In this document: piece after piece, positions 1,852 through 22,100 of the stretch | How the letters are laid out: each line of letters opens with the position of its first letter | Numbering within the stretch: position 1 is the stretch's first letter | Source of the DNA: Anolis carolinensis | Taxonomy: Eukaryota | NCBI RefSeq assembly: GCF_035594765.1 | Contig: NC_085844.1 | Span: 186,388,107 to 186,452,106, forward strand | Reading direction: 5' to 3' | DNA length: 64,000 bases | Position numbers and translations under genes: made by a program | The notes under the pieces: model-generated | What the model was told of the DNA's origin: nothing | What the model saw: only the letters and a program-made list of their open reading frames with translations | The model's database searches: none

Positions 1852-1896
<45 letters not shown>

Positions 1897-4340
1897 TCTG
1901 TTGATTTTCTTTGGGGCTGCCTTGGTTGTAGGAGCCCAAGCTCTTCTGTTACTATCACTGCTGCACTGTAGGCATACTGGTTTGTTTGTTCAATTGATGT
2001 TATTTGGACAGTGGAGAGTACTGCATTCACATCTTTCATGAGAGGCGCCAGGTGTCTCTTGGGCACTGTTTTTAGAGTTGGGAGCCGCTTTCTTATTGCA
2101 TTTGCTGCAGCATGAGCCATGATCTTATCCTTGATCTCATGTTGTCTTGCTGTCAAGGTTCCTGGTGGTTCAGCAGATGTTTCAAGTGCTGGTTTTTCAA
2201 ATTCTTGCAAAAGCTCCACACTTTCTTCTGGTTCAATCTGTTCCACCATTCCAAGTGTTGCTGGAGTCTCTGCTGCTGTGTGTGCTGTGGTCTGATGGTA
2301 ATTTACTTTGCAAATTTTCTGGATTTCTTCGAGTTCAACTTCACTGAACACTTTGTTTCTGATTATGAATCTTCGTTGGTCAGCCAGTCGGGGTTCTGTT
2401 ATCTGTGAGTCAGGGTACTCTTGTTTCCACAGTTGATGCATCCTTTTTTGGTAGCCACGCCTTTGAGGTTCAGATTTGTAGTAGCATTTCATAATTGTGC
2501 GGTTTTCTGGCATTGTGTATTTCTGCCGCTTCTGTGACTGTTCATTTGGGTTTTGATGATTCCGTAGCCCACTTGTCGATGGATGTCCAGAATCAGCAGC
2601 ATCCACCGCGGTCCTTTTTATCCTGGGCGACGACCGAGCCAGTATAGACTTCGTTTGGGTTTGATTCTCCATAATGCTAATGGGTTAGGTGCTCTTGGTT
2701 CTGCTCCTCAGCTGAGGCCTCTCTGGCTTGGTTGGACCTGCCGGTAGTTACACTACCGCCAGCACAGCCCTCAGTCATCATTGGAGCAGTTAAGCCCGCC
2801 CACCACGTCAAGGTGGCACCTTGTGGAGTTTGGATTGGACATGGAGTTTGGTTTGGACAAATGTTCGACAGTGGCATTGAAGAAGGGAAAAATCATTGAA
2901 AGTGAGGGCATCAATATGCCCAATGGCCAAACAATAAGGTGTCACCAGCCAGAGGCCTACAAATATCTGGGCATATTACAGCTGGACAACATCAAGCATG
3001 AACATGTGAAAACTGTGGTCAGCAAAGAATACACACAAAGGGTCAGAAAAATTCTCAAAAGCAAGCTCAATGGAGGCAACACCATCAAGGCCATAAACAC
3101 CTGGGCCATACCTGTCATAAGATATACTGCTGGCATTATAAATTGGACACAGGCGGAACTGGACAATTTGGACAGAAAAACAAGAAAACTCATGACCATT
3201 CATCATTCACTGCACCCTCGCAGTGATGTTGACCGGCTATATCTGCCTAGAAGATCAGGGGGCAGAGGACTCCTACAAGTAAAACAAGCAGTCAAAGAAG
3301 AAGAACATGCCCTGGCAGAATATGTAAAGCAAAGTGAAGAACCTGCTTTAATTGAAGTCAAAAATCAGAAACTCCTCAAAGCGCAGCAGACAAAAAACCA
3401 GTACAAGAAAACCGCACTACAAACTAGAGCTGACAGCTGGCACAACAAAACACTGCATGGAAAGTTCCTTGACAAAATTGAAGGAAAAGCTGACAAGGAG
3501 AAGACCTGGCTCTGGCTCACGAATGGGACCCTGAAGAAGGAGACAGAAGGCCTGATCCTTGCAGCCCAGGAGCAAGCCATCAGAACAAATGCAATCAAGG
3601 CCAAGATCGAAAAATCAGCTGATGACCCAAAATGCAGACTGTGCAAGGAAACCGATGAAACCATTGATCATATCCTCAGCTGCTGTAAGAAAATTGCACA
3701 GACAGACTACAAACAGAGGCACAACTATGTGGCCCAAATGATTCATTGGAACTTATGCCTCAAGTACCACCTCCCTGCAGTAAAGAACTGGTGGGATCAC
3801 AAACCTGCAAAGGTTGTGGAAAATGAACACGCAAAGATACTGTGGGACTTCCGAATCCAGACTGACAAAGTTCTGGAACACAACACAGCAGACATCACAG
3901 TTGTGGAAAAGAACAAGGTTTGGATCATTGATGTTGCCATCCCAGGTGACAGTCGCATTGACGAAAAACAACAGGAAAAAATCAGCCGCTATCAGGACCT
4001 CAAGATTGAACTTCAAAGACTCTGGCAGAAACCAGTGCAGGTGGTCCCGGTGGTGATGGGCACACTGGGTGCCATGCCAAAAGATCTCAGCCGGCATTTG
4101 GAAACAATAGACATTGACAAAATTACGATCTGCCAACTGCAAAAGGTCACCTTACTGGGATCTGCACGCATCATCCGAAAATACATCACACAGTCCTAGA
4201 CACTTGGGAAGTGTTCGACTTGTGATTTTGTGAAACGAAATCCAGCATACCTATCTTGTTTGCTGTGTCATACAACGTCGTTGTGTCAATAATAATAATA
4301 ATACTTATTGTTGTTGTTGTTGTTATTATTGTTGTTGTTG

Positions 4341-4399
<59 letters not shown>

Positions 4400-7300
4400 T
4401 CAATGAAGTTGCAGGGCCAATTTTGGAAGACTGAGCCAGTTGCTATATATCTATTTCAATTTTCAACACGAGATTTTCATGTGTAAAGCCTCCATTATTT
4501 CATGCTTATTCTGTAAAATATGGTTGTTACACCACTATGTCACCTTGTCAATAACACAATAAAATTAAGAGAAACCTCTAGAGGTTTCTGTACATTTTTC
4601 AAAGCAGGGGTGAGGAACCTATGGTTCTATATGTGCAATTTGATTCTTACTCTCACCAGTCTTTGGAAGCATGGCCAATGGTAAGGAATGATTGGAGATG
4701 TAATCCAACAATGTTTTTCACAGCCGATTAAAAAAAACTGTGCAGCTCTATGCCACATTCTTTCTGTATCTTTTTCTCTATATAGATTATGGCTAGGGAT
4801 TTAAGAAATTACTTTTTTTGGATTACAAAAGCTGGAAGTCACTAGTCTGCATGGCCAGAGACAAAAACAACATGTTTCTTTAGGGACTCAGGAGAAATCT
4901 CCCAAACAAGAACATACACCATTGACTTTTTTTACTGTTTTGATTTTGGAAGAAGAAAGCAAGAAACAAGTGTGCACTGAGGAGAAGCACAGAAGTAGAA
5001 AGATAGAAACTGTTGGGATATTCATTTGTTAATGTGAAAACAAGCAGAAGTAAATTGCTGGATATAAAGTAGTAGAAAAAGTATTAAACTATAGAGAAAT
5101 TGACGAAGGGAAACAGGAAATTATTTTAAAAAACTACTTTATGTACATATGTTTGTATTTCAAATTTATGTTTAGTTAGAGGTGTAAGTTAGTGAGAAAA
5201 ACTAATTAATTAATTATATAAATGTTATTCAAATATGTTTATGTATGTATAGGAATTGTTTTCTTGCTTTTTTTTTTTGCTGTTGTTAAAATTTCAAATA
5301 ATAAAGAAAGAAATAGAAAGAAATATACCTGACTGGCACAGAGGTCTTCACTCCTGGGAGCGTGAGAGTGAACTGTCCATTATGGATATATTTGTATGTC
5401 GAGACAGGCTTGTTCTGGAGGACATCAGGTGCTGTCCGGATGAAGACCCGATGCTGCAATGCTCCTGCACTGCTCCCTCGATTTGTGAGTGCAAAAGAGT
5501 AATTTGTGTCGGGCTGCAGGTCATTGATCAACTTCTTCATGGAGTGGCCATCCACCTCCACAGTCTGACCATTGTACAGAATCTGTAAATGTAGGAAAAA
5601 AGTCACACACTCCAAGTTAATAAGCCTCCCCAAGAAAAAGATTGATGAAGTCCCTTCCTGTTTTTCAGTTCTGGCTTAACTGGGCATTCCTCACAATCTT
5701 CTCACTGCATAAGATGAATTGTTTTTACCTGTGAATATAACTAACCTGAATGATCACAACCGCATAATCATGATTGCCAAACACTCCTGGCCCACTTAGA
5801 TACAAGATCCATTTCAGTCAAGGTTAATTTTGAACAGAACCTGCCTTCGCTGTGGTGAGAGAGCGTGGGGGGGGGGGATATGCTGAGACTTTGCTGAGCT
5901 GCTTACTGCCATAATCTGACTTTTTCTCCACTTGGTGCCCCTCCACATGCTCTTGGCAACAACTCCAAACATACTTGACTGTTGATTATGCTGGTTGGGG
6001 GCTGAAGGAAATTCAATTCCAACAATTTAGAAGGGTACAAGGTTGGCAAATGTTGACATAAACAGGGATAAGAATTGTGTGATCTTCCAGAAGAGTTAAT
6101 GGATGGCAACTCACAGCAACTATAGCCAATTGTGAGGAATTCTGGGAATTCAAGTGAAGGCTCAGGTACCTTGACCCTGAACAGAAGTTTCCTTCTAGGT
6201 ATACTGTTTGGGTAGGGCCTTGGAAATCCTACAACACAGTGATTCAATTCCTATTTGGATATCTTCCTATTTCAGAAGATCGTGATTGCTATTGCTCCAT
6301 ACACAGTTTTGTTATGGGGTTGTATTTTATCTTTGCTGCTGTTACACTATTAGGAGAAACTCTTTGGGCATATGGAATAAGATGTGACCAGTGGTGACAT
6401 TCTGGTCTATTTCTCATTATCAGCTGGTCCATATGAGTTCTAGTTCTGAACTCCTGTGAGAAAACACACTGGATGGAGGTCAATGAACTGAAATTTTATC
6501 CCAATATGATGGTGGTAATGCTGATGTATGATTATCTGCCTAGTTTAGTAGTACTTAATTTGGTTTGAAAAGGGTGCTCCCCTTCTAAAAAAAACAGGTG
6601 TTTAGTTTGGGGTTTTGCTTGAGTCCAACACTGCCACTAATATGTAGGTTGAATAATGCAGCCTTGTCAATCAGAACGCTGTCATGTTCCTGCTCCCTCC
6701 ATGCATTCTTTATAGACTTTGCTCCAGCTCCTACTTGTACATTTTAGATCATAAATTTATTCAAGTTGCCAAGGTGCCAGCTGCTTCAACAACTTTATTT
6801 TATTCCTGGAAGTCTTGGGGTTACAATATTGTGCTTCTTCTCCCTCTATTTTTTTACAGGTATAGCTCTCAAGAAGGGAAAACTAAAAGCTTTGAAGATG
6901 TGCTCCCTATGGTATTATTGCAGTGGTGGTAGTTGAAAAATAATTCATAATGGATTTGTGGGATTTCAGTCTAGCATCAGAAAGAGATTTTGTTCCTGTG
7001 CCCTCATATTTGCTGCAAAAAAGTAATAAACCGGCTCTTTCAAATACTTTCAAATCCTGCATCTGTAGATTTTTCAGGGGACAAAAAGATTGCCAGATAT
7101 GTTTTACAAGTTTGTTACCAGTTCACCAAGTATTGACTACTTGTAGGTATTGAAAGGCTAGATGATCTCTTAAGTTTTGGAGATTGTTCATGCTTCCCGA
7201 CGGAGGGCCACAGCCACCCCTTGAGGCCCTCTAGCATCCCTTCCTATTTTTTTATTGTCTTCTCAAACTTAAAACAGCTAGAGGTATGTAGCAAATTGGC

Positions 7301-10104
7301 TTCCTGGCTCTACAATTTTCAGTGGTCCTTTTGAGTATTTTTTAAATTGCAAGCATGGATGATTACATTGGAATTTATTTTGAAGGAGCTCTGAATGTGA
7401 GGGGCATGTGTCCCAAAGGTACTCTATCCATATCTGCTGTGCAGCTTCAGTTCTATATGAGAACCCTCATATGAAGGGAATTTCTGCAAACGTTCATTTT
7501 TTGTACTTAGAATTTTTTTAAATCACATATGTCATTAAATCAGTTATTTAAAAAATTATTTTGTTTATTTATTACAATAAATAAATAAATTAAGTGACAA
7601 CACTTATTAGAAAAAATAATGCCCTTTGTCCAATCTGAAGCCCAATCTAAAGAATAATTACCCAAGCAAAGAAATAAATTTGATCAAAGTTTGCAACACC
7701 TGTATGAAGATTGGTCAATTCTGAGCACATGTGTGCCTTATCCCAAGCCTCATGCAGAAACAACTATTACTGTGGCAAAGTTACATTGAGCTGGGCAATG
7801 GGAATTTCCTCTGCAAACACAGGGAGAGGCTATGGAATACTCTTTCCTTTCATGGCCTTTTACTCTTGTGCCACCAATTTAACAGGACTAGGAGATGTGG
7901 GTGATCTAGCATAGTGTTGGTTGTCTCTGCCCACTTTCTAGGGGAAAGGTTGGTTTGGGATTATGGGATGGAAACAGAATATTTCATGTATATTTCCATG
8001 AAAAGGTCCAAAAACCCTATTCTTATTACCAAACAAGATATAAACCCCAAATGCATTTCAGCATCAAACAAATAGAACAGCTTCACTTTTAGATAAGGTA
8101 AAGTGTTAGTTTCAAATTGTAATAACAATCTTGGCATAACATCCTCTCACACTCACTGCAAAAGACCAACCATCCCTTTGCAGGGAGTTTTATCTCCTAG
8201 ACCAGATGAAGCAATGATTCTTCCCTAAGGAGAACTGAAAAATCTCATTATTGATTTTTAGTGCAAAAAGATTCAGAGGTTCATCCCCAATAAAAATACC
8301 ATGAGGGTTAGCCTGCACCTCAGTATTCATAAATCAGAACAATATCTGCTTTAATTAAATCTGTTAAAGAGAAAGATGACACCCTTTGGGATGTAGATAT
8401 AGTGTGAGACTGTTTATCAAGTGTAGATAATGCTAATTGTTCCCATGGAGATTTATCAGTGTTGCTTGTTAGATTATGAAGCTTTGGCCTGGCATTCTGC
8501 ATGCCCGAATTAAACAGCCAAACACAGAGGGGAGTCCTGTTTGCAAAGTTCCAGTTTCCAGAGATCACAGCTGCTACTGGGCTAACTACTCTGTTGGTAC
8601 TTGGGCATGACCTGTACATCTAGGATTGTCAATGAGAAGTAAGCTCCTTGACATGCCTTGTGTTTGCATGGCTGCTTCTCAGCTAGCAGGCCACCCACAC
8701 CATCTGGTGCTTCATCAAGACTAACCTACCGTAGGAATTACTGTCAGTACTCCAATCATTTTAGCAACCTCAACTAAGGCAGCCACACTAGACCTTATAA
8801 AACCCACACCAGTTAACAGAATTGATTATTCATCCCCTGGATAAAGAGTAGTTTGGTCATACAGCAGTGGGAAGGACCTTTTAAGATAAAACTTGCCTTA
8901 TAGAATACCATTGCTAAGAAGAATGGTTACTTCTGTTTATTATGTCACCAGTAAGAAAAAGCAGACATGGACAGAGCTGCCTTTTCAACTGGTACTCTCA
9001 AATGACTGAGTTAGGATTTCATGGACAGCATGAATGGCTCCTGCCCATATGGTTATATTGAAAAAATATCTCCTCAATCAATTGATACTTCAGAAAACAC
9101 AGCTCTCACTCAAGTTTTGGGCTCCTTACAAGAGTTTACATTTGAGGAGCAGAACTCTTGGTCCTCTTGCTGATTATGAAGCATTTTGGTACAAATTAAA
9201 ATTTGGGCATAGATGGGAGGGTTCTCAAGCAGCGAAGTCAAATTGAAAGGGATCCCTCAAGATCAACAAGAGAACCAAGACATTTTTTGCCTAGGAATGC
9301 AAAAGTTAATGGCTCATTAAGGGCTCCTTCAGTGAGCCAAAGTAAAAGAGGTCTAAGGGAAAAAGTGCAACCTTGGACTCCAAGCACTTGTTGGAGTTGC
9401 ACTTGTATCCTGACACCAAACACTGAGATTGTTTGCTTATACAGCATGTTCAGACAAATACTAGGCTAATGGCAGTAAACTGCCTGCCTTAAGAATCCTT
9501 GAGGGAGAGCTCCTCTCATCTTTTCCTATTAACTTTTATCAAGGCACAGACAGATTTGAATCTGCCCACAAGGGGATTATTAATATTATGCTTAGATCAG
9601 GCAGTCTTCCATGGCTGATATTAACTTACCTTGAAAGGTACTACAGAGTTGTAAGTCTCTGGCACCTCCCAGCTCAGCAGCACTGATGTTTTCATCACAG
9701 CACTGACACGGAAGTTCTTTGCAAACACTGCAATTAGAAAGAATCCTTTTAAGCACATCCTGTTGAGGCAACAGTGGGCTACACACCAATCCCAATCCCT
9801 GCCCTTCCACCTTCCTAATAAGCAACAAAAGTTAGTGATAGTTACAATAAAGCTCTTTCACATTACAGAAGAACACCTGGGTTTCTCAATCAGTCTCCCA
9901 GTGCAAATACTGTGTACTTTTCTAAACACACAGATGGGAGGTTAATCCTGAGTTGTGACCTTTCATTCTCCCCTTTGTTTCTTCATCATGATCAAAAGGT
10001 AGATGTTATTAGGTCCTGGTTTGTCAAAAAAGCTATTTTAAAGCATACCAATGCAATTGTGCCACAGTTCTTACGTGCAAAGAGAAAGTGATATGTGTGT
10101 CTGA

Positions 10105-10162
<58 letters not shown>

Positions 10163-13100
10163 TTAAAGCAGTTCTACAACCTTCATGCTCATGACAACCC
10201 ATCCCATCCTTGGTTATAAGCCCAGGTAAGTCAGACTGATCAGGTAATCTCTGACCTATGCCCAGGCCATCTCTGACCTATTGCATGGGAAGCGGGTGTT
10301 AGTATCTGAATACAGCAGGAGGTGCCTACCTTGTTCCATTGGCATCGTCCTAGACTGAATGCTGGGGCTGAGAGGGCCAGCTCCCTTGCTAGTATGGGCT
10401 CTAACTTTGATGTCATAAGTTGTGTCAGGTTTGAGGTTGGCAAGAGTGATGCTCGTTTCCTTAGTAACATTAGTCAGGTTCTGCTGGCTGTTAATGTCTC
10501 TGTATACAAGCGTATAGTTGGTAATTTTCCCATTCCTCTCAGACAGGAGTGGTGGATTCCAGGTCACTTTAGTGGTAGAAGTGGTAAGGCCCACCACACG
10601 CAGGTTCTGGGGGAAGCCACTTGGCACCTCCTCTGCAGTAGTGATTTCCTTCTCAAACTCCTCCCCAGGACCAGCCCTATTCTTGGCAGCCAACTTGAAG
10701 ATGTAGGTGGCACCCTTGTAAAGGCCGGTCACAGTGTGGTGATCATCATTCTTCCCCAACTGAATTACTGTCATCGTCTCCTCATCAGCACGTTTGTACT
10801 GTAGCCTGTAGCCCAGGAGCTCCCCAATCATCTCTTTGGGTGGGTGCCAATTGATTAGGGCTGTATTCATGGATGTGGTGCTGATCATCATGGCAGGTTT
10901 GCCTGGGACTGTGGGACAAAAACAGGGGTGACATGCTGTAGGAGGGTAGGACAGCAAACTGACTATTTGGCGTCTCTCACCCAAGCAGGTTTACAGCTTA
11001 ATTACAAATGGTATGATCATTCCTGGACTGCAACACATCAGACCACAGATGAACAATTCCATTCTTGAACGTTAAGTCACATTAAAAACATTATTACATA
11101 CATAAAGGTGGTACATGCAACAGAAGGCTAAGCTAAAAGGCTTTTCCATTACACACTAGGTTAAAACATGAGGAGTATTTCTGATATGAGTAACATTCAA
11201 AAAATGCAAGTCATTGCCTACAGTTTGAAGTGGTTCAGTCCAGGAAGGTTCTGATTACCTTAGCTTAGCCTTTACCTTTATAGGCTTTTACATTTCATAA
11301 TTAAAACAAAACAAGTGAACAAAAATATAAATTTTATGGACAATTTTATGGTCCAATTAAACAAAATACGCTTAATTAATATAATTTTGGTCACACAACT
11401 TGGCCCATTTGGTCATGCAATTTAAATTTTTTGTGGTGGCAGCTCTAGGATTGGAAACGGTCAGAAAACAAACCCCACAGTTCTAGTTAGTGATGACTGA
11501 GTTTATATCTTGCTTTTGAATTCTTTGAAATGCTATACTTTGTAAAAACTTTCGTGATAGCAAAATTATTGAATTCACAGAGACTGCTAATGCAGCATGT
11601 CAACAGCTGATGTGTTGAAATTAAAAATGAAATAGGAAAGATTATTGGAACATTATTAGTAACTCTTTTCAGAAAGACAACTATATTAGTTAGTCTCAGT
11701 ATAAAAAGAAAGGCATTTTGTGGCACCATTAAGACAGACCAATTTGTTTCAGTGTAAGTCCACTTTTTCAGATATTTGGAATGGAGCCTCAGCACACAGA
11801 CGTGTCTATAAATGCCTTTCTTCTTTTAGCTACTCTGAAATTGTCACCCAACCACCATACCAATATATATTTTCTTTTTTGTTACATTTCCTACTCCTTC
11901 CTTGTCCTGTGCTTGCACACATGTCTGTCAACTGAAGCTTCATCCTATGCATCTGAAGAAATGGACTGGAGTCCATAAAACATGGGCTAAAATAAATTAG
12001 TCCTAAAGGAGCCACAAGACTCCTTCTCTTTTTTATATTAGCAGCTACAAATAACCTGTTAATTAATCTAGAGACAGCACTTCCTGACATGATAACTAAA
12101 ATCAATATCCTATTGGATATTGCCTTCAAAACCTCCTTTGAGTTGTCTCACAAATTTTAATGCATTTGCCCAAACACTCCTTCAGCTCTAGTGTTTGCAG
12201 AAGAAGGTACACAAAGAGAAAATTTGGACCCAATGAGGAAGAAGGTAAAAGATACTGCCATAAGTGAAAGTAATCTGGGTGCTAGCAGAAAGTGATAAGG
12301 ATATGCCCAAGCTTATATCTGGGATCCCTGCTACCTTGATGCAGGCAATTTTCATAGCAATCGTAATAATTTCACCACCTGTGTGAGCTGTTGAGAGAGC
12401 GTGGCATGCTGTTTGCAATCAAAATGTGCTGTGTTTGAGCTGATGAACTGACTCCTGCTAGGAATGCTGATGTGATGGCTGAGCAGCAGAAGGATTCCAA
12501 ATTGTCTATGTGTTGTACAAATTAATGGCTGCTCCCTTCAAAACATAACACCTGCTGTATAAAATGGATAGTTTCATATCCCAGTTCCACCCACAACAGA
12601 CACACATCCTTTCCCGAAATCACATAAGATTGGCATGCAAATCCATCAATGGCAAAACTATTCCTTGTCAGTCAAGTACCAAGATTACCATTACTCTGAA
12701 CTGAATGTTGCACTAAGAGTCAATTTCCAATAGTAAACTATTATTTTAGGTATGAATTTGGCTAATTTGTAATGAAATTGTGGCGTGAGTTTTATATAGT
12801 TTTGAAAGATCTAATAGTTTTCATTTGGTTAGGTGGAAATTTTAATGTCGGGATGAACAGAAGAGGTGGAGACAATAAAGAGTGAAGACGATGAAAAGGA
12901 GAAGCCAACAAGAGTAGCAGCCTTGAAGTGGTTTTTTGGCAACTGCAGTACAGGTATCAGTGGACAGTTAACACCACTAATATTCCTTCAGAAAGATTAG
13001 TCCACAGGGACTAATGTAAAATTCATCCAGGACTCAGCTATAAAATATGAAAAAGGATCAGACGCTAGCAAATTCCAGTTGAGAACAACCCCTCGAAATC

Positions 13101-16100
13101 CCTCAAACTAACACCCCCAATGTTTAAATACTAAGATATTTAAATTTCTGGAGTCACTATACCTTATCTATTGTGAGTGCAGACTCAGAACCTACCAAAG
13201 TGGAATTTGGCAAATTAAGGGCAGGGGAGGCCAGTTGTTTCAGCCAAAGACATTTGGTTTCCCGGGTTTATATGCACATACACACGGTCCAAACCTGCAC
13301 ACTGTCTAGAGCCAGCAGGATGATACTTCGCCAACATACTGTAAAAATCCAGGCAACACTCCAAAGCAAAAGGGGACACTATTGAAAGCCTTCCTACAAA
13401 ATCTCTCAATTATCCTATTAGGACCATGGAATAAGAAAAGGCTTCAGCTCCAAATCCTGATTAAAATGGGCAGGGCTCTGCCTCTTATACTGAACAATGT
13501 GCCACCCTGATGCCATTTTCTCTATTTGCCTGCTACTGTTTGTTTAAACAAGCATGAAGTAGAAGAAGTAAACAAACAATGTTTCTGTTCAAGGCACAGA
13601 CGTCTACATCCAGGATTGCAATATTTTCATATTCCAAAAATACACACACTCACAATTTTACATCCACAACAGTTTATAGGGTGACTGCAGCACCAGGAAG
13701 CTGTTATGAAACAGTTTATCATTGACAAGTTTTGTACATGCAGAACCTCTCTATCTAGGAAAAAAACATATTTATCACAATTATATGGATTGTAAATGGA
13801 TAGAGATATTTTTCCTTTCCTCATTCTTAATATTAGAATTTGGAGCAATGCAATGAAATTGACTGGAGATGTGATCCAGACATACAAAGACAATTACAGA
13901 ACCCAAATTTTATTCATGGCATTTATTACCGTAAGATTTTGGTAGGCAATGTCTGTTGTTAAGTGGTATCTATACATTTACACACAGATACACATGCATA
14001 TATGCCTTAAAACATGCTCTCAGGAGCACTATTTGACTTCAAAACAAGGTACATTTCAAAGCAGCTTTGCTGCTGATGCAATATGGTGAAATGGCAACTA
14101 TAAAAAGTTAGTGTCTTGCCACATTTTGGCCAAATTTTGTAGCAATGGCAGCAGCAAGACCTTGAAGTGAGAAGGAGAGGTGCACTACAAAAATGGCCAG
14201 TAGGCTAAATACAGCCTGTAACTGGTTTGTTGACCACTCCTTTTATGGAAGTGGTTTAAAAAAGTATTTTACCAGTTCATGAAAAATATATATCCCAAAA
14301 ATTAACAGCATAATAATTGTATGAAACTCTTAGGTACAGTTTCTAGCGCTTATGCTCCTTCTGATTGTTCAGTCTAGAGAGGAACCTTGAGGGCAGCAAG
14401 TAGATGCAGAATGCTAGATGACATGGGAGATTATCTCCATGCCATAAAACTGTTATTTGCGGCTTTCAAAAAAAGGGTGAGTTTCTGCTTTGCTCTTCTA
14501 CAGAGTAGCCTAGTTGCTTTCTCCATTGCATGGAGACATTTCTGCAAGTTATGAAACAAGGTAAAGGTTGTAGATTTCCTGACCCCTCTGAAAATCAACA
14601 TTTCTGCAGAGTCAATAACTGCACAGTTGTGTTAACCATTCTAGGGCTCAAAATGTCAAAACAGACTTGTCCACCAAATAGAGCAGAAATGGCTCACCTG
14701 CTCCGGTTGTGGTAATCACCTTGGCCTTGCTGCGGGCCCCATCCCCTTTCGTAGTATAGGCGGCAATGCTGACAGAATAGGTTGTTTCAGGTGAAAGGCC
14801 TCCTATGACAGTTTCCTGTGAGAAAATTACATACCCTTTTAGGTTTTTATGTATTTATAAGCACAAAGAAGGGTGAAGTATCCAAATACTTAAGTCTTTC
14901 AGATATTTATGACTTATTTATGTAGCTTCAAAATATCCAAGAAATTAATTTGATGTCCACTTTAACACATTCCTTTTGCAGTAATAGTAACCAATTTATT
15001 TATGAATTTTAACATGTTTTATTTGTGCATTTTAGCATGATTTTTGTCCACAAAAGCCCATGCTAAAACATGTTAATCTTAAAAGTATTGTAAGATGCTC
15101 CTGAAACAGGCTAACACTGCTATCGGTTTGAAACTTGTCATAACATTGTTATTAGCCAAAGTATTCCATAAGGTCTTATTTCTTGGAGGTAAATTAACAA
15201 ACCATCTAGACATCAGCCAACATTCTGAAAGAGCAACAGAGATCTAGCAAAATATTCTACGCAAGCAAAAAATAATGGACAGCAAATACTAGTTTTTCCT
15301 CCTTAATGGTGTGATCCTCCTGACTATGAAGGATAAAAACGTCAACATTTGATTGTCAAACTGGTACAACTGATTACCCATTCACAGAAGCGAAACTATG
15401 ATATAAACCAGAACTGTGAAGAAATAGGTACAGTAATTGATAACGTTTTCTTCCTTGAGTTGTTGGAGTTTTCCTTAGTTGTCATAGAATTCTGAACATT
15501 TTTTCATTGTTTTCATTTGCAATCCCAAATTAACAAAGTAGGTGATCAAACACAAATGAAAATAACACCAAAATCAGAGTATAAATTAGACCTCCTTTCC
15601 CCCCAGAGTTTGCGAGAGTGAGTAAAATCAATCAATGGCAATGAATTGATATGAAGCAAGATACCCAAACATACAACTCACTAGGTTACAAACACCTGTA
15701 AAAGAGATACTCATCACCACAGTCCACACAAGAGAAATTCACAGCTAGGAAAAGAGCATGCCATCGGAATGAAGCAAGGAAGAAGGAAGAAAGAAAAAAG
15801 AAGGAAGGACAGAAAGAAAGAAAGAAAACCTGGGAAAAGGGGAGATGATATAACAGACATAGGGCTGTCGCTGCAAATACCTTTTAACAAAGTCCATCTG
15901 TCTGTTAAGGACTGGAGGCCACAACAAGGTATATAATTGAATCTTTTTCTCTCTAAAGGTAATTTTCAAGCTTGTTTTTTCCAAATTTATATTTCCAAAT
16001 TGCTTCAAAATTGAATCTTAACTGTTTAAATGTGATTGTTGTATTATTTGAGCCTCTGTTTCAACTAAAGGTCACAGATGAGAGAGCAGGGTATTTTTCA

Positions 16101-19100
16101 TGACTGGGATCAATGAGGTTTAAAGATTATAGATCTGACTTTGCCATGTAACAAGCTGGGCCAACGGCTGTAGAGAGCAGACTGATCTCTCCACATCTGC
16201 CTGAAATTGCATCGCAACAAGCTGGAAATAAAGATTATGGAAAATGTCAATTGCTTTTCTGCATTTAGCAGCAATCTAAATGCCAATTTGCTCAGGATTT
16301 GCGGCTGGTGGAAGCTCCACAGAGCAACTCCCAGAACAATCTGAGGATTGACAGGAATGTTTTGACAGCACTATGCGCACAGATTTCAAAAGATGATTCT
16401 CAGACCCTTCTGATCCAAGCGAACACACTCACAAATTGTACTTACGTGGTCAGCAGAGTCCTTAAACCTCAGCTGATGGGGAAAGGAAGGAGGAGAGAAA
16501 ATGGAGACAGAATAAGGGAATGACGACAACAAAGCTTGGATTATCATACACACACAAAATTTGTCTCTAGCTCGATCCAAGTGTATGTATGGCTTTCTTC
16601 TGTAAGCAGCTCTAGAAAAGTCACACAAAATACCACACCTAGTTACCAAGCTTTCTTTCTTCTTTGGTTTTCCCAAAACTCTGCAGAGCATTGAAGGCTA
16701 TGAAGTTATGCAAACATAGGAGTAAACATTGCTCAGGGTATCGGCTATACTCAATGAATTCCCTAGGCTGGTTCTGGAGGCCAGCTTCAGAAAGGGTGTA
16801 TTGCTGTTGTTGGCAATACATGGATTTATTTATCGTGTCAGAAGCAAACCAAGGGTACAAGTTGTAAAGTATTTGAGAACATGAAGTTAAAAAAACTTGG
16901 CATTATGCTAAATGCCCTTTGACCAGTAGCTGGCCACTTGGGAGTGCTTCTGGTGTTGCTGTAAGAAGATCCTCCATTGTGCATGTGACAGGGCCCGGGC
17001 TGCATTGTAATAGGTGGTCTGTGGTTTGCTCTTCTCCACACTCACATGTTATGGACTCTACTTTGTAGCCCCATTTCTTAAGGTTGGTTCTGCATCTCGT
17101 GGTGCCACACATAGATGAACACAAACCAGAAGATTCTTATTTGAGCATAATAATCTACACTGCTGTTTTAGAAAACCAATATGATCTTAGTGGAAAGAAA
17201 ACTTAGGACCATTATATTCTGTAGCTGGGCACAAAATGAAGCAGAAGAAATGGCTGGCGTAAACTTCAGGATGATCATATTGTCCACCCCTGTTGTTGAA
17301 TTCCCAAGCAGAATTCCCAGACTGAATTCTCTGGTTAATACATGTAAGAGCTTCAATTATGACAAGATAAACTTCCTTGGGAACCAGCCAGAGAAACAGC
17401 TTGCTCATCACTGTAATAAATTTCCACGTCTGTCGCATCAGCTGAGTTTCAGAAATTTCTGCTAAGAGTGCATTCACCTAAAATAATGCTATAAAGCAAG
17501 CAGATTTCTGGCACTCAACATTTACTCATCTCTTAGCTTTCCAAAGAAACATGCCGACATTCGAACAGAAGGAGAACAGTATTCACATTGATCCCACCCT
17601 AGCAAACTAATGGACTCATGTAGCTGAACTATCTGACTCTTGTTTTGGTGTTACTTGCTCAGTAGTAAATGAAGATCTGCCAATGATACAGATGGTTTTC
17701 CAACTAGCAAAACTCAAGGCCAAGCTCTCAAAATCATGTGAGGACCAGGGATACAGGACTATCTGCCAGTAGGAAGGACTAATGTAGACTGCATTCGTGT
17801 GGGTGTGTTAGGGGGAAAGAAACAAAGCTGACAAGAGAGTATGTTTACCCACATATGGCATTAAGCTGGTTTCTGAACATCTTATATTTCAGAAAAGACT
17901 TTTATCATGCAATCTCATCCTGTGTCATTTAGGGAATATATAATATGTGTTTGTCCAAATGATATTGCCCTGCATTTTATTGGTAGTCCCAACTAGAGTA
18001 ATTCTATTGAAGCGATTGGGCTTCTATAAGTATTGATTCACAGTATTGGGCCTATTATATGTAGGACTACCAAAAGAACACATGCCACTGCCTTCAACTT
18101 TTAGTTATCATGTGTTTCCCGAATCTGTCTTTTTTAATTTCAAAAAGGAACCATTGTTGTGCAATGCCTTCTGAATGGTAGCATTAAGATTCTGTATTCT
18201 GAAAGCATCCCTTGGATGCAGACCTGCTTTGTAAGTCATTGATTCCTTCTGCTATGCCCATCTCAGCAAAACATGCTTCTTGTTATCCATCTTAATTCCT
18301 AACAGTAGTTATTGTTTAAAATGTGCACTGCAATGGATTTAGTTAACTTTTTTTTTTAATTACAAAATTGACAAAAAATTCTACCCAATAACTATGGGAA
18401 AAGGAGAAGAGAGCATGGGAATTTAATAAACCAAGGGGGAATTAGGGCATGTATTTTATTTCAAACCACAGTTTTGGGTATTAGATCAGTACAGAAGTCA
18501 TGCAGAATGAGGCACTAGGAACTTCTAAACATCTCAAGCTTTTATTCTTTTTTGTTTTGTTCTATAAAAACAATTTTTTGTTCCTATGACTTAGAAGACA
18601 GACTTGAAATATGATGGCAAAGTACAGAAAACAGAAAGGAAGGGTGATTCAGATTTCAGGGGTCAGGACACTCAGCCTAAAAAGGATTTTGATGTTCTTA
18701 ACAAAAACAGATTCATGCACAGCAGTGTGATCTTTGTTTGATTTGTCCAAGAAATAAAAGTTACAGCATCTAGCTTTAACTTTGCAAAATTGAGATTGGG
18801 GACAACATTTTTAAAGTTATGCTTGCATGCTGGTAGCTGCTGTGAAATTGAATAGCACAGGACCCCGTCCCATGTGGCAACATTTTTTTATGAAATTGCT
18901 CTACACCTGATTGTGGTTACTTTAATCATGGAACTACAAAACTTCTCCTAGAATATGATTTATACTGACATGCTCAAAATTGCAGTAAATTTATATATGA
19001 GGAGTTGCTTTATTCATGAAGATTCGTGAATGGAAGTGTGCTCATGCCAATATAACTATTTCTCCTCAAATTGTTTTTTTTTTTGGGGGGGGGGTGCGCG

Positions 19101-22100
19101 AGTTGTATTATAGAATGGAACAGACTAATCACAGCCCTGCTGGGTGTTTTGTTAGACCACAACTCCCTTCAGGCTTAAGTCTGGACTGAGGAATGCTAAG
19201 AGTTGCAATTCAATGGTATCTGGAGAGAAATATTTTGCTTAGCTCAATATAGGAGGCTATTCATTACACTCCACACAATGGCATCTCTAGTTCTCAGGGA
19301 AGGCAATGGTAAGAGAAGTGGGACTGCAGATGCAATTCAGAGATGTCAACAGAAGCCCTATTTTGCTCCATGCCCAGACTGTCTCTGCCTGAAACATCTC
19401 AGAAGGAATACAAAAAACAAACTTCCCACCATTCTGGCTACCTAATTTAATTTAAAACTGCTATCTGCATTTTTATGCAAGCCACCATGATAGCAGTACC
19501 CATGAGACAGAAAGACATATAGGGTGTCCACATCCATTTGCCCTGTGTTTCAACTTATTATCTATAGCACAGACCATGGTTCTACCTCCTGAACCTGATG
19601 CAGACGATCATCAACTCTGATGTATCCCACTTTGTGATATGTGTTTTACAGACAGAGGGACAAAACAATTCCACCAAGCATTTCATTCTATTACCCATCT
19701 GAAACAACTACCTGGAATTGTTCTTATAAACTATGTCAAGAGCAATTTCAAGAGAGGCCAGGGTAGCCTCACATCCTATAACACCAGCATTCAGAGTTAT
19801 GATAGCATATAAACATGGCCCTTTGCACAAGAACTGGGTGGTACATCTTGTTGATTTTCTTCTCTTAGTCTAAAGTCTCACCTTGGTCTTGACTAGTTTT
19901 GTCTCAATCCCTTAGATGTGACTAATATGCCAGGGAAGCAGAATTGTGTCACTTACCGTTGATTGGTAAGTTTGGAGATTCTCATGAATGGATAAGGTGG
20001 TAGAATATGTTATTAATATTAGTCATAAATATTTATGTGATATATTTTTAAGTGCTCAAACAACTTTGCACATATTATCTCAGTTACTTACTTAGGGGAT
20101 CCCTCGTAGTTCGAGGATGATGGTCCTCCGTCTTTGCTATCTTGGGGATAGATCCGTAGATGGCTGAAGACTTAGAAGACACCTGTGCGTGATTTTTTTT
20201 TTTTAATGTGTGGAGATCGGTGCACGGCCAGTCAACACACAGTCTTCACAGAATGAGGTCCCAGCAGTAGTGTGGTTAACACAACGAGAATGGCTTCTCA
20301 GTCTGTTGCAGCCTTCTTCTGCCTTCACAGCCATTGTAACATGTATCATGTTATCCTCCGCCTGCTCCGCCATTGAGGTCTTTGGGTCTTCAGATTGTTC
20401 TTCGGATCCTCCCCTGTGGCCACTTCTGGGAATGCATGACTTCAGTGGTTGTGACCACATGTTCATCAGAACACGCAAGCCCCCTCACCACGGCAAGGTG
20501 ACAATCCCCTCGATAGATTATCTCAGTAATCTTGACTAAGTAAGATAGTATTTTAGCTGTGTCTCTTAGTTGGGATGGAAGCAATGATTTCATAATAATG
20601 TTTCTGACTAATATTTTGCACCAGAGTAGTGGTGCTCTCAGGACAAATTTTATGTAACCACCTCCCACTAACTCAGATGCATTCTCTCTCATTTGAAAAT
20701 GGGGCTACATAACACATGAGAATTGATGCCATTTCTTCACCAGTACTATTTATCTACCCCACTGGGACTCTGTGGTGGAAATCTGAACATCTTAAGTATT
20801 CCCCTTAAAATGTTATGAAAGAAAAACATAGCCCAAGCTAGAGATTTAGGGTATATCTACATTGTGACAGTAATGTAGTTTGACACCACTTTAACTGCCA
20901 TAGCTCAATGCTATGGAATCCTGGGAACTGAAGTTTGCTGAGGCACCAAAACACTTTGACAGAGAAGTCTAAAGACCTTGGTGTTTCAAAACAATGGATC
21001 TGATTTGAAATCACTATATCTCTGCAACCATGAATCGCCCATGAAAGAAACTCTTACCACTTGAAAAGGTGGAGCATAGAGTTTCAAATGATTATCACTA
21101 GATATCTTTCCCAGCACACAAACAGGCCCTAGACTCAGTCATTTGCAAGATGGCAACGTTGTAACAGAAGGTGTTTATGTTCTGTGATTCAGCAAGACTC
21201 TCTCAATCTGTCCGTACAACAGGTGGAAGGCATTTATAAAATGATTAATATAACTTGATAAGTCATTAAACCATTTGTAACTTTTTGTGTAATTGTAATA
21301 TGTTGGGATCATGAAATATGCTGCTTTGAAATTGGGTCTATCATTTTGAAACATCCCATATAACTCCCATGATTCCGTAACATTGAGCCATGACAGTTCC
21401 AGTGGTGTCAAACTGTATTCATTCTACAGTGTACATGCACCCATACAATTAAGTCAACACTTGAGTCTTTCATCTTTTGACCTGTGTCTGAACGAAATGA
21501 AAAGACAGAAATCCAGAGAACTATTTAAAAAAAAATCTGCAGCAAAGTTACTGGCACATACACACAAATGTAGAAATAAGCCTATTGTGTGAATGAGTAC
21601 ACTGTGTTCCACAATTAAAAAAATAACACAATAACAAAATTATTTATTGAAGAAATGAGGCCGAATTATGTGAAGGTCAGCATATACAGTGAGCCAATTT
21701 AATCTTGAATAGGTATTTTTAAAAAGGGGCTGTAATTGAAGAACTCAGCACACTAAAGCCTCTTCTCAGATCAGAAAAACCTCTACTGTACTTAGATCGT
21801 TCTGAAATCTGTTCCAGTTAAGTGTTTAAATTTATGAAACCATCACCTGCAGATAAAAAAATATTCCTCTGCTAAACCAGCCCAATTGCTTTTTAAGTAT
21901 TTAGTGTGGCTGAGCAAGATGAATGGATTTCAGGAAGCCACTGGCCTTAATAAAAAAGATTCAGTCGAGGCCTCTGCTTTGGAGCAGTAGAACCGATGTA
22001 GACAGAACTTGTGCTGGCGGCTTGTATTTATGTTGGCTGCTACGGCTTTGTAACATTTCATTTTAGGTTTCATCATAGCTCTCTGTAGCCACTGCCTCTC

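What the first reader, a model, noticed from the sequence alone, without database searches (positions are those of the whole stretch)
2688..20507. Same structured 5' RNA module, with a kink-turn, in two unrelated retrotransposon clades (Dong/R4 at 2688-2820 and RTE at 20392-20507)
Seen: on the minus strand both elements start with the same architecture. (a) A stem pairs the start of the module with its 3' end: GGTGC/GCACC in Dong, GGATTGT/ACAATCT in RTE. (b) A 5-bp hairpin has a near-identical 7-nt loop and a compensatory change: CCACC-TTGACGT-GGTGG versus TCACC-TTGCCGT-GGTGA. (c) Both keep a GGGCTT segment. (d) Both have a kink-turn signature (stem, 3-nt bulge, tandem GA/AG). In Dong it is a perfect box C/D pair, CTGCTCC-A-ATGATGA...CTGA-GGAGCAG. 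In RTE it is GTTCT-GAT-GA...GA-GGATC, extended by TGTGGTCAC/GTGGCCACA. (e) A purine-rich AAGA linker precedes the closing strand in both. In Dong, GGGCTT can also pair with AGGTCC (2739-2734), a possible pseudoknot, and the module ends 15 nt before the ORF ATG. Established: Dong/R4 encodes a restriction-like endonuclease and RTE an APE, so the clades are deeply separated; K-turns bind L7Ae/15.5K (SNU13); some non-LTR 5' ends are HDV-like ribozymes. Inference: this may be a portable cis-acting RNA exchanged between clades, such as a non-HDV ribozyme, a translation-initiation element or an RNP-assembly signal recruiting SNU13. I do not know of a functional description of it, but cannot check the literature here.
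Basis: partly seen in the sequence, partly recalled or inferred. Interest (0 to 1): 0.8.

Follow-up and report, generated by a model that had tools for sequence, protein, structure and literature searches.

The report
HDV-like ribozyme relics heading two retrotransposons
The shared "5' RNA module" is the already known hepatitis-delta-like self-cutting RNA that many jumping genes use to trim their own 5' end; both copies here are broken relics lacking one strand of the fold. What may be new is a conserved kink-turn-like loop in its side arm.

Summary
They are the parts of an HDV-like self-cleaving ribozyme, not of a non-HDV element:
- "closing stem" = P2
- "hairpin with 7-nt loop" = P3/L3
- GGGCTT = the end of P1' plus J1/4
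- "K-turn region" = the base of P4
- "AAGA linker" = J4/2, with the catalytic C just before it

In these, a 6-nt strand just upstream pairs with the 6 nt after GGUG, and it covaries between lineages. On 108 aligned copies, P1 is 94.7% paired and P2 90.1% paired, with compensatory changes in 5 of 6 and 7 of 7 pairs.

Both window copies lack the P1 5' strand, so they cannot self-cleave in place. The Dong copy lost it at its inversion junction. The second copy lost it by truncation.

HDV-like ribozymes at R4/Dong, RTE and L1Tc 5' ends are published. This scan had also noted them on other DNA of this genome.

Three points remain open:
- The second copy's RTE identity cannot be checked in this window.
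- A K-turn-like loop at the base of P4 recurs in many lineages.
- The Dong P4 domain is homologous to that of termite APE-LINE ribozymes, which suggests whole-module exchange.

The parts
2816..2820 (-). Dong copy: P2 5' strand (GGTGC). The P1 5' strand that should lie just upstream is missing.
   Evidence: Pairs with 2688-2692. P2 covaries across the family: 7 of 7 pairs have double changes. L002 has GGCAC/GTGCC.
2801..2815 (-). Dong copy: P3 (CACC/GGTG) with 7-nt L3 (UUGACGU)
   Evidence: L3 keeps U...CG at the places of U20, C24 and G25 of HDV. P3 is 99.5% paired in 108 copies.
2792..2800 (-). Dong copy: P1 3' strand (GGCGGG 2800-2795) and J1/4 (CUU 2794-2792). The C can form a one-pair P1.1 with the G of L3.
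   Evidence: In other genomic copies the sense strand upstream of GGTGCC reads a C-run then GC then A, so CCCGC pairs with GCGGG (loose ends at 2821). L088 has CCCGTC/GGCGGG.
2701..2791 (-). Dong copy: P4 domain. It has a basal stem 2789-2783/2707-2701 and a K-turn-like loop (AAU-GA 2782-2778 opposite GA 2709-2708). Beyond that come a stem and a three-way junction with two hairpins.
   Evidence: Consensus fold with termite relatives. P4 homology has z of 8-9. The loop motif recurs across lineages. Variants in other copies at 2788/2702 and 2787/2703 run in the compensatory direction.
2693..2700 (-). Dong copy: J4/2 (AACCAAGA); candidate catalytic C at 2698
   Evidence: The family consensus is A-C-Y-A-A-G-A. 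71% of other genomic copies read U at 2697, which gives AACUAAGA.
2688..2692 (-). Dong copy: P2 3' strand (GCACC). The ORF ATG follows at 2672-2670.
2822..2839 (.). Inversion junction filler, unique to this locus. It replaces the ribozyme's P1 5' strand.
   Evidence: Contig depth falls from about 1e5 to about 1e2 at 2822-2835. Homology of the plus-strand 3' piece starts at 2840. L003 comparison.
1893..2821 (-). Inverted 5' piece of the Dong element (ribozyme remnant plus 259 codons of the ORF), abutting (TAA)n
2840..4290 (+). 3' piece of the same Dong element (RT tail, zinc-binding motif, endonuclease part), ending in (TAA)n-type repeats
   Evidence: 89-96% amino-acid identity to Anolis carolinensis proteins.
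20501..20507 (-). Second copy: P2 5' strand (GGATTGT). No P1 strand upstream.
20486..20500 (-). Second copy: P3 (CACC/GGTG) with L3 (UUGCCGU)
20477..20485 (-). Second copy: P1 3' strand (AGGGGG) and J1/4 (CUU)
   Evidence: Relatives with the same P1' carry CCCCCT or CTCCCT upstream (L023, L066, L072). Here the upstream reads ...TATCGAGG.
20405..20476 (-). Second copy: P4 domain with a K-turn-like loop (GAU-GA 20467-20463 opposite GA 20411-20410) and a 9-bp distal stem
   Evidence: The basal stem is imperfect.
20392..20404 (-). Second copy: J4/2 (CGAAGA, C at 20404) and P2 3' strand (ACAATCT 20398-20392). An ATG lies at 20373-20371.

Best explanation
Both modules are copies of one family of HDV-like (hepatitis-delta-virus-like) self-cleaving ribozymes that sit at the extreme 5' end of non-LTR retrotransposon RNA.

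The intact order is: P1, a 1-5 nt J1/2, P2, P3 (CACC), L3 (UUGNCGU), P3' (GGUG), P1', CUU, an optional P4, J4/2 (A-C-Y-A-A-G-A), then P2'.

How it works (inferred from the family, not tested here):
- The element is transcribed as part of a longer host or read-through transcript.
- The RNA folds into the nested double pseudoknot.
- The J4/2 cytosine, with Mg2+, cleaves just 5' of the first P1 nucleotide, here a C.
- This frees an element RNA with a defined 5'-OH end that starts with the ribozyme.
- The folded ribozyme lies 15-18 nt before the ATG, so it may also help translation start.

The two copies in this window are relics. The Dong copy lost its P1 5' strand at the junction of a 5' inversion. 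The second copy is cut off just 5' of P2. Neither can cleave in place.

A K-turn-like internal loop at the base of P4 is an accessory feature of many family members. Its role is unknown: it may bend P4 for folding, or bind an L7Ae/SNU13-type protein.
For: Fold:
- In 109 parsed copies from metagenome contigs carrying the same core, the 6 nt upstream pair perfectly with the 6 nt after GGUG in 91 copies. Different lineages covary: CCCCAC/GTGGGG, CCCCAG/CTGGGG, CCCATC/GATGGG, CCCCCT/AGGGGG, CCCTAT/ATAGGG, CCCCAA/TTGGGG, CTCGCT/AGCGGG, CCCGTC/GGCGGG.
- On an unfitted MAFFT alignment, 86.4% of cells pair against 76.5% in shuffles. The covariation score is 0.232 against 0.090 (0 of 500 shuffles reach it), and slid controls give at most 0.069.
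- On 108 model-aligned copies, 90.2% of cells pair and 22 pairs have double changes against 11.5 expected (0 of 500). P1 is 94.7% paired. P2, which was not part of the model, is 90.1% paired with 7 of 7 pairs compensated.
- Some lineages lack P4 altogether (L010, L059, L072, L082, L088), as in known HDV-like ribozymes.

Placement:
- Copies begin directly after unrelated flanks, or after (TAA)n (L001, L085, L003).
- In other genomic copies of this Dong family, the sense strand upstream of GGTGCC reads a C-run then GC then A, preceded by AT-rich flank. That supplies the P1 the window copy lacks.

Independence: a model built without any window or lizard sequence finds both window modules and the L001 and L002 modules.

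Literature:
- Dong of Bombyx self-cleaves at its 5' end after (TAA)n. R4 and RTE ribozymes are cited there (PMC3774820).
- L1Tc cleaves 5' of C+1 and has a one-pair P1.1. Its primers show the same GGUG-P1'-UCU and CUAAGC-P2' layout (PMC3185411).
Against: - No cleavage assay or RNA 5'-end data. All runs available were contigs, which cannot show RNA ends.
- No Rfam HDV-type family matches the window copies or intact relatives.
- The +1 pair is C-G rather than the usual G-U wobble.
- P1.1 can be only one G-C pair. Both partners are invariant in the set, because the search pattern fixed them, so there is no covariation for it.
- P3 does not vary, for the same reason.
- Most of the 108 sequences belong to two closely related worm-metagenome families, so the number of independent lineages is about 15-20.
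Confidence: 0.9

Rival explanations
1. It is a non-catalytic structured 5' UTR (a translation-initiation or RNP-assembly element) that merely shares the double-pseudoknot shape.
For: The module ends 15-18 nt before the ATG. Translation promotion by such folds was reported by Ruminski et al. 2011 (from my own knowledge; the paper is not held). The window copies could not cleave anyway.
Against: The conserved single-stranded residues are the catalytic ones of HDV-type ribozymes: U...CG in L3 and C-N-A-A in J4/2. P1 begins exactly at the element's first nucleotide. Close analogues (Dong, L1Tc) cleave in vitro. The two roles are not exclusive.
Confidence: 0.06
2. The core identity is a box C/D-type or K-turn RNP signal. 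The module exists mainly to recruit SNU13/15.5K-type proteins, with the rest serving as scaffold.
For: The Dong copy has a perfect stem, 3-nt bulge and tandem GA/GA motif. Among the 99 aligned copies that have this loop, 59 show GA opposite GA and 19 GA opposite UA. The A next to the stem is nearly invariant.
Against: Several lineages have no P4 at all yet keep the whole core. The termite lineage has AA opposite UA. Many worm copies carry an A-A mismatch in the basal stem (pair 54/205). Rfam snoRNA matches are at noise level. So the motif is an accessory, not the defining part.
Confidence: 0.03
3. The similarity of the two window modules is chance, or convergence limited to a short active-site string, with no common descent of the modules.
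For: Convergence of HDV-like active-site sequences in unrelated elements has been argued (PMC3774820). The P4 of the second copy is not significantly like any other P4 (z about 2-3 or less).
Against: Chance is excluded: 0.00 matches expected and model E-values of 1e-5 to 1e-8. The Dong P4 domain aligns with the termite APE-LINE P4 at z of 8-9, with 0 of 300 shuffles reaching it. L002, a Dong relative, carries the GCGUG...CU-GAG-GA start typical of the second copy's version.
Confidence: 0.05

Closest known systems
L1Tc ribozyme (Pr77 hallmark) of Trypanosoma cruzi, an HDV-like ribozyme (PMC3185411, PMC4035085)
   Same: It occupies the first nucleotides of a non-LTR element. Cleavage is 5' of a C at +1, and P1.1 is a single pair. 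The published primers give GGUG-CCAGGG-UCU and CUAAGC-GCCUGCUG, the same P3'-P1'-J1/4 and J4/2-P2' layout as here.
   Different: It is a minimal 77-nt form with a short P4. [quoted passage not shown] Nucleotides 7-26 of L1Tc could not be read from held text, so identity of P3/L3 is recalled, not shown.
HDV-like ribozymes of R4 (Ascaris) and Dong (Bombyx mori) (Ruminski et al. 2011, not held; PMC3774820)
   Same: Same clade and the same (TAA)n target. The ribozyme sits at the element's 5' end, and cleavage releases the (TAA)n leader.
   Different: The Bombyx Dong 5' end starts differently (primer). The lizard version carries a long P4 domain shared with termite APE-LINEs.
HDV-like ribozymes of RTE elements (drz-Agam-2 family of Anopheles; Ruminski et al. 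2011; PMC4908430)
   Same: An HDV-like fold heads APE-type RTE elements.
   Different: drz-Agam-2 is activated by a structured J1/2 domain (P1.2). Here J1/2 is 1-5 nt and the elaboration is in P4. Rfam's drz-agam models do not match.
R2 ribozyme, and the HDV and CPEB3 ribozymes
   Same: Nested double pseudoknot, U...CG in L3, C-N-A-A in J4/2, variable or absent P4.
   Different: P1.1 has C-C/G-G pairs and a G-U at the cleavage site in HDV. R2 often uses upstream 28S sequence for P1.
Kink-turns (box C/D, Kt-7, Kt-23)
   Same: A canonical stem, a 3-nt bulge, then G-A and A-G opposite each other. The observed variation at the 2n position (G, then U, then A) is the kind recalled for Kt-23 variants (from my own knowledge).
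   Different: Not a snoRNA: there are no guide regions or box C'/D'. The motif is absent or degenerate in some lineages. No protein binding has been shown.

Membership tests
HDV-like self-cleaving ribozyme | P1 helix whose first nucleotide is the cleavage site, with its 3' strand directly after P3 | tested here: met
   Met in the family: 91 of 109 copies have a perfect 6/6 helix, 94.7% of cells pair, and 5 of 6 pairs are compensated. NOT met in the two window copies, which lack the 5' strand.
HDV-like self-cleaving ribozyme | P2 helix crossing P1 (5' strand between P1 and P3, 3' strand at the very end) | tested here: met
   Both window copies have it. 7 of 7 pairs are compensated and 90-94% of cells pair, although P2 was not in the model.
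HDV-like self-cleaving ribozyme | Short P3 closed by a 7-8 nt L3 with conserved U, C and G | tested here: met
   CACC/GGTG with UUGNCGU. There is no variation in P3 because the search pattern fixed it, so this rests on sequence match only.
HDV-like self-cleaving ribozyme | P1.1 mini-helix between L3 and J1/4 | tested here: inconclusive
   One G-C pair is possible (the G of UUG with the C of CUU). Both are invariant, so there is no covariation. L1Tc is reported to have a one-pair P1.1.
HDV-like self-cleaving ribozyme | J4/2 with a catalytic C followed by N-A-A before P2' | tested here: met
   A-C-Y-A-A-G-A in nearly all lineages. Window: AACCAAGA and CGAAGA.
HDV-like self-cleaving ribozyme | Mg2+-dependent self-scission giving a 5'-OH product | not testable with these tools
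   Only contigs of public runs were available.
Rfam HDV-type families (HDV_ribozyme, CPEB3, drz-agam) | Score at or above the family's gathering threshold | tested here: not met
   No such match even at E up to 1-10, in the window or in intact relatives.
Kink-turn | Canonical stem, 3-nt bulge, tandem G-A/A-G, then a non-canonical stem | tested here: inconclusive
   The sequence signature is met in the Dong copy and weakly in the second copy. It recurs in 59 (GA/GA) plus 19 (GA/UA) of the 99 aligned copies that have this loop. The termite lineage departs from it. The kinked geometry and protein binding are not testable.
Box C/D snoRNA | Boxes C and D with terminal stem, guide sequence, snoRNA-sized independent RNA | tested here: not met
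   Only noise-level Rfam matches (sR14 at 9.8 bits against a threshold of 38). The motif is internal to P4 of a larger fold.
Dong/R4 clade element (first copy) | Insertion in (TAA)n, single ORF with RT and a C-terminal zinc motif/endonuclease | tested here: met
   (TAA)n lies on both sides and in relatives L001, L003 and L005. zf-RVT match. RVT_1 in homologues. No Pfam endonuclease match.
RTE clade element (second copy) | APE endonuclease plus RT ORF of RTE type downstream of the 5' end | tested here: not met
   No APE or RT similarity at 17137-20200. The N-terminal 65 aa have no meaningful relatives. The copy may be a short 5' fragment, so its clade stays open.

The most novel reading that the evidence does not exclude
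Two claims together. First, this L1Tc-type HDV-like ribozyme family carries a conserved kink-turn at the base of P4 that either recruits an L7Ae/SNU13-type protein or bends P4 to stabilise the core. Second, whole ribozyme modules (core plus P4 domain) have been swapped between APE-type RTE-like LINEs and the endonuclease-different Dong lineage. Other Dong relatives use a tRNA-like leader instead, so 5'-end processing signals would be interchangeable cassettes.
Probability: 0.3. Interest if true: 0.55.

Novelty: new member of a known kind. Interest (0 to 1): 0.33.

Why it matters
It explains a striking cross-element similarity by a known mechanism: ribozyme trimming of co-transcribed retrotransposon RNA. 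It also extends that mechanism to lizard Dong elements.

The same catalytic core is very widespread in animal-associated metagenome contigs, yet no Rfam model finds it. Annotation pipelines therefore miss it.

If the K-turn and the module swapping hold, they bear on two questions:
- how non-LTR elements acquire 5'-end processing and translation signals;
- whether host K-turn-binding proteins take part.

Tried and rejected
- Rfam at gathering and at permissive E-values, on the window and on intact relatives: nothing relevant.
- RNAfold MFE z-scores: not significant, and uninformative for a pseudoknot.
- Searching upstream of the window modules for a P1 strand: none in either copy. The partial match CTCCAC upstream of the Dong module belongs to the junction filler and plus-strand piece.
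- Hammerhead and twister readings of CUGAUGA and AAGCC: considered by eye only and dropped once P1 was found. There is no Rfam support.
- Confirming RTE identity of the second copy by Pfam on all open stretches, by tblastn with termite APE peptides, and by an exhaustive protein search of the N-terminal ORF: all blank.
- Ruminski et al. 2011 could not be read. Full-text searches for the core sequence, and for HDV-like plus kink-turn, gave nothing relevant.
- RNA 5'-end mapping: no raw-read RNA runs were offered.
- ARAGORN on the L005 leader was negative, but Rfam's tRNA model passes its threshold there.

Full report
**What is in the sequence**

- The Dong copy has GGTGC (2820-2816) pairing with GCACC (2692-2688). 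Its hairpin is CACC-TTGACGT-GGTG (2815-2801), followed by GGCGGG-CTT (2800-2792). A long arm is closed by CTGCTCC/GGAGCAG (2789-2783 with 2707-2701), and AACCAAGA (2700-2693) precedes the closing strand. The ATG lies 15 nt further on.
- The second copy has the same order at 20507-20392.
- The 24-nt shared core occurs twice in the window against 0.00 expected.
- Plain MFE folding is unremarkable, and Rfam finds nothing.

**Context of the two copies**

A minus-strand 5' piece (1893-2821: the module plus 259 codons) is joined to a plus-strand 3' piece (2840 to about 4290). Both sides are flanked by (TAA)n-type repeats.
- Its proteins are 89-96% identical to Anolis carolinensis proteins.
- The second copy is only a short 5' fragment as far as can be shown. 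No APE or RT similarity lies between 17137 and 20200, and its N-terminal ORF has no meaningful relatives. I could not verify that it is RTE.

**Finding the missing strand**

The order of the parts already looked HDV-like, apart from a missing P1 5' strand. That order is P2 5' strand, P3 hairpin with a 7-nt loop, a G-rich strand, a long arm, C-N-AAGA, then P2 3' strand.
- Relatives reached through the Dong ORF (L001 Phrynocephalus, L002 Hemicordylus) carry the module. L002 has a doubly compensated P2 (GGCAC/GTGCC). L001 has ACCCC upstream pairing with GGGGT, right after (TAA)n.
These come mostly from animal-associated samples.
- In them the 6 nt lying 2-5 nt upstream of P2 pair with the 6 nt after GGUG. 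The helix is perfect in 91 of 109 parsed copies, and at least eight different covarying versions exist.
- Flanks upstream of that strand are unrelated between copies, so the element starts there.

**Statistics**

- On an unfitted MAFFT alignment of 55 sequences, the double-pseudoknot structure gives 86.4% paired cells against 76.5% in shuffles. The covariation score is 0.232 against 0.090 (0 of 500 shuffles reach it), and structures slid by 1-3 columns reach at most 0.069.
- A covariance model was built from 51 metagenome sequences only, with P1, P3 and P4 as its structure.
- It finds the window Dong module (39.8 bits, E 3.8e-8), the second module (31 bits, E 7e-6), L001, L002 and a further copy in L003.
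- On the 108 matches it aligned, 90.2% of cells pair, and 22 pairs show double changes against 11.5 expected (0 of 500).
- P1 is 94.7% paired. P2, which the model did not contain, is 90.1% paired with all seven pairs compensated.
- Caveat: about three quarters of the rows belong to two related worm-metagenome families. P3, L3 and CUU could not vary because the search pattern fixed them.

|---|---|
| Closing stem | P2 |
| Hairpin and loop | P3/L3, with U...CG at the positions of HDV U20, C24, G25 |
| GGGCTT | Last three nucleotides of P1' plus J1/4; its C can make a single P1.1 pair with the L3 G |
| K-turn region | Base of P4 |
| AAGA linker | J4/2, family consensus A-C-Y-A-A-G-A, with the presumed catalytic C (2698; 20404) |

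P4 is absent in several lineages, as in known HDV-like ribozymes.

**Why the window copies lack P1**

Logan contigs of four runs were laid on 2500-2900.
- The Dong 5' piece is very highly repeated.
- Depth collapses at 2822-2835, so the junction filler is unique to this locus.
- Where this locus diverges, at 2821, other copies continue in sense orientation with a C-run, then GC, then A, then GGTGCC, preceded by AT-rich flank. Thus CCCGC pairs with GCGGG of P1'. The inversion junction removed P1.
- In other copies 2697 is U in 71%, which matches the family J4/2.
- Variants at 2788/2702 and 2787/2703 run in the compensatory direction for the P4 basal stem.
- The second copy simply starts at P2. 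Relatives with its P1' (AGGGGG) carry CCCCCT or CTCCCT upstream.

**Comparison with the literature**

- PMC3774820 states that cleavage at the element's 5' end is found in R4, Dong, RTE and L1. It shows self-cleavage of Bombyx Dong, which releases a 21-nt (TAA)7 leader, and cites Ruminski et al. 2011 for R4 and RTE. I could not open the Ruminski paper.
- The L1Tc ribozyme cleaves 5' of C+1 and has a one-pair P1.1. Its published primers give GGUG-CCAGGG-UCU and CUAAGC-GCCUGCUG, which is the layout found here.
- Earlier notes of this scan, on other DNA of the same genome, independently called HDV-like (L1Tc-type) ribozymes at Dong 5' ends (s1-590219, s1-611921, s1-596312). One called an HDV-type fold with a kink-turn at an RTE 5' end (s1-619963).
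- The class, its location and its role are therefore known. The lizard copies, and the large invertebrate family that Rfam does not detect, are new members.

**What remains interesting**

1. *K-turn-like loop.* It consists of a stem, a 3-nt bulge, and GA opposite GA or UA. It sits at the same place at the base of P4 in the Dong copy, the second copy, L002, both worm families, L074, L066 and others. Among the 99 aligned copies that have this loop, 59 are GA/GA and 19 GA/UA, and the A next to the stem is almost invariant. The termite lineage has AA/UA, and many worm copies have an A-A mismatch in the basal stem. Full-text searches found no paper that links natural HDV-like ribozymes with kink-turns.
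2. *Shared P4 domain.* The P4 domain of the lizard Dong ribozyme aligns with that of termite ribozymes: 30 of 38 identities, z of 8-9, and 0 of 300 shuffles reach the score. Those termite ribozymes are followed by an APE ORF whose N-terminus looks RTE-like to me from memory.
3. *A different leader in a Dong relative.* A Dong relative in L005/L006 has a tRNA-like leader at the same place instead of the ribozyme.

**Verdict**

This is a real feature, correctly observed apart from the missed P1 and the unverified RTE label. It is already explained as an HDV-like 5' ribozyme, present here as two inactive relics.

Noticed in passing
L005:5670-5742 (also L006): A Dong-like element (3' protein 61% identical to the window copy), inserted after (TAA)n, has a tRNA-like leader where the lizard copies have the ribozyme. 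Rfam tRNA scores 30.8 bits against a threshold of 29, E 7e-5. ARAGORN is negative, and the ribozyme model has no hit. This may be an alternative 5'-processing cassette.
   Followed up: partly
L003:6285-8443: A Centruroides sculpturatus (scorpion) contig holds a Dong copy 83% identical in protein to the lizard copy. It is also 5'-inverted, but with different breakpoints. The high identity between scorpion and lizard suggests horizontal transfer or contamination.
   Followed up: no
L003:8548-8692: A second, more divergent HDV-like candidate lies right after (TAA)n in the scorpion contig. P1 is CTCTCC/GGAGAG and L3 is UGGUUGU. The model scores it at 18 bits, E 0.017.
   Followed up: partly
L008, L122, L053, L126, L041, L019 (termite-associated contigs): Ribozymes of the same core with a 91-nt P4 domain head an APE-encoding LINE. 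The N-terminus reads GTWIVRTLN..GKLENLKKEM. The best named relatives are from Cryptotermes secundus.
   Followed up: partly
window 16906-17136 (-): A 77-codon open stretch with a weak zf-RVT match (E 0.2) looks like the C-terminal tail of some LINE. It may or may not belong to the 5' fragment at 20203-20507.
   Followed up: partly
window 10256-10984 (-): An ORF with two fibronectin type III domains (E 5e-33), probably an exon of a host gene.
   Followed up: no
window 1852-1892 and 4286-4400: The motif (AAT)n-ACTTATT recurs on both sides of the composite Dong insertion. That is consistent with one insertion event into a (TAA)n microsatellite.
   Followed up: partly
L007-L126: Most worm-metagenome copies have no long ORF downstream (only 15 have a stop-free stretch of 150 codons or more within 5 kb). 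Many may be short non-autonomous elements carrying the ribozyme.
   Followed up: no
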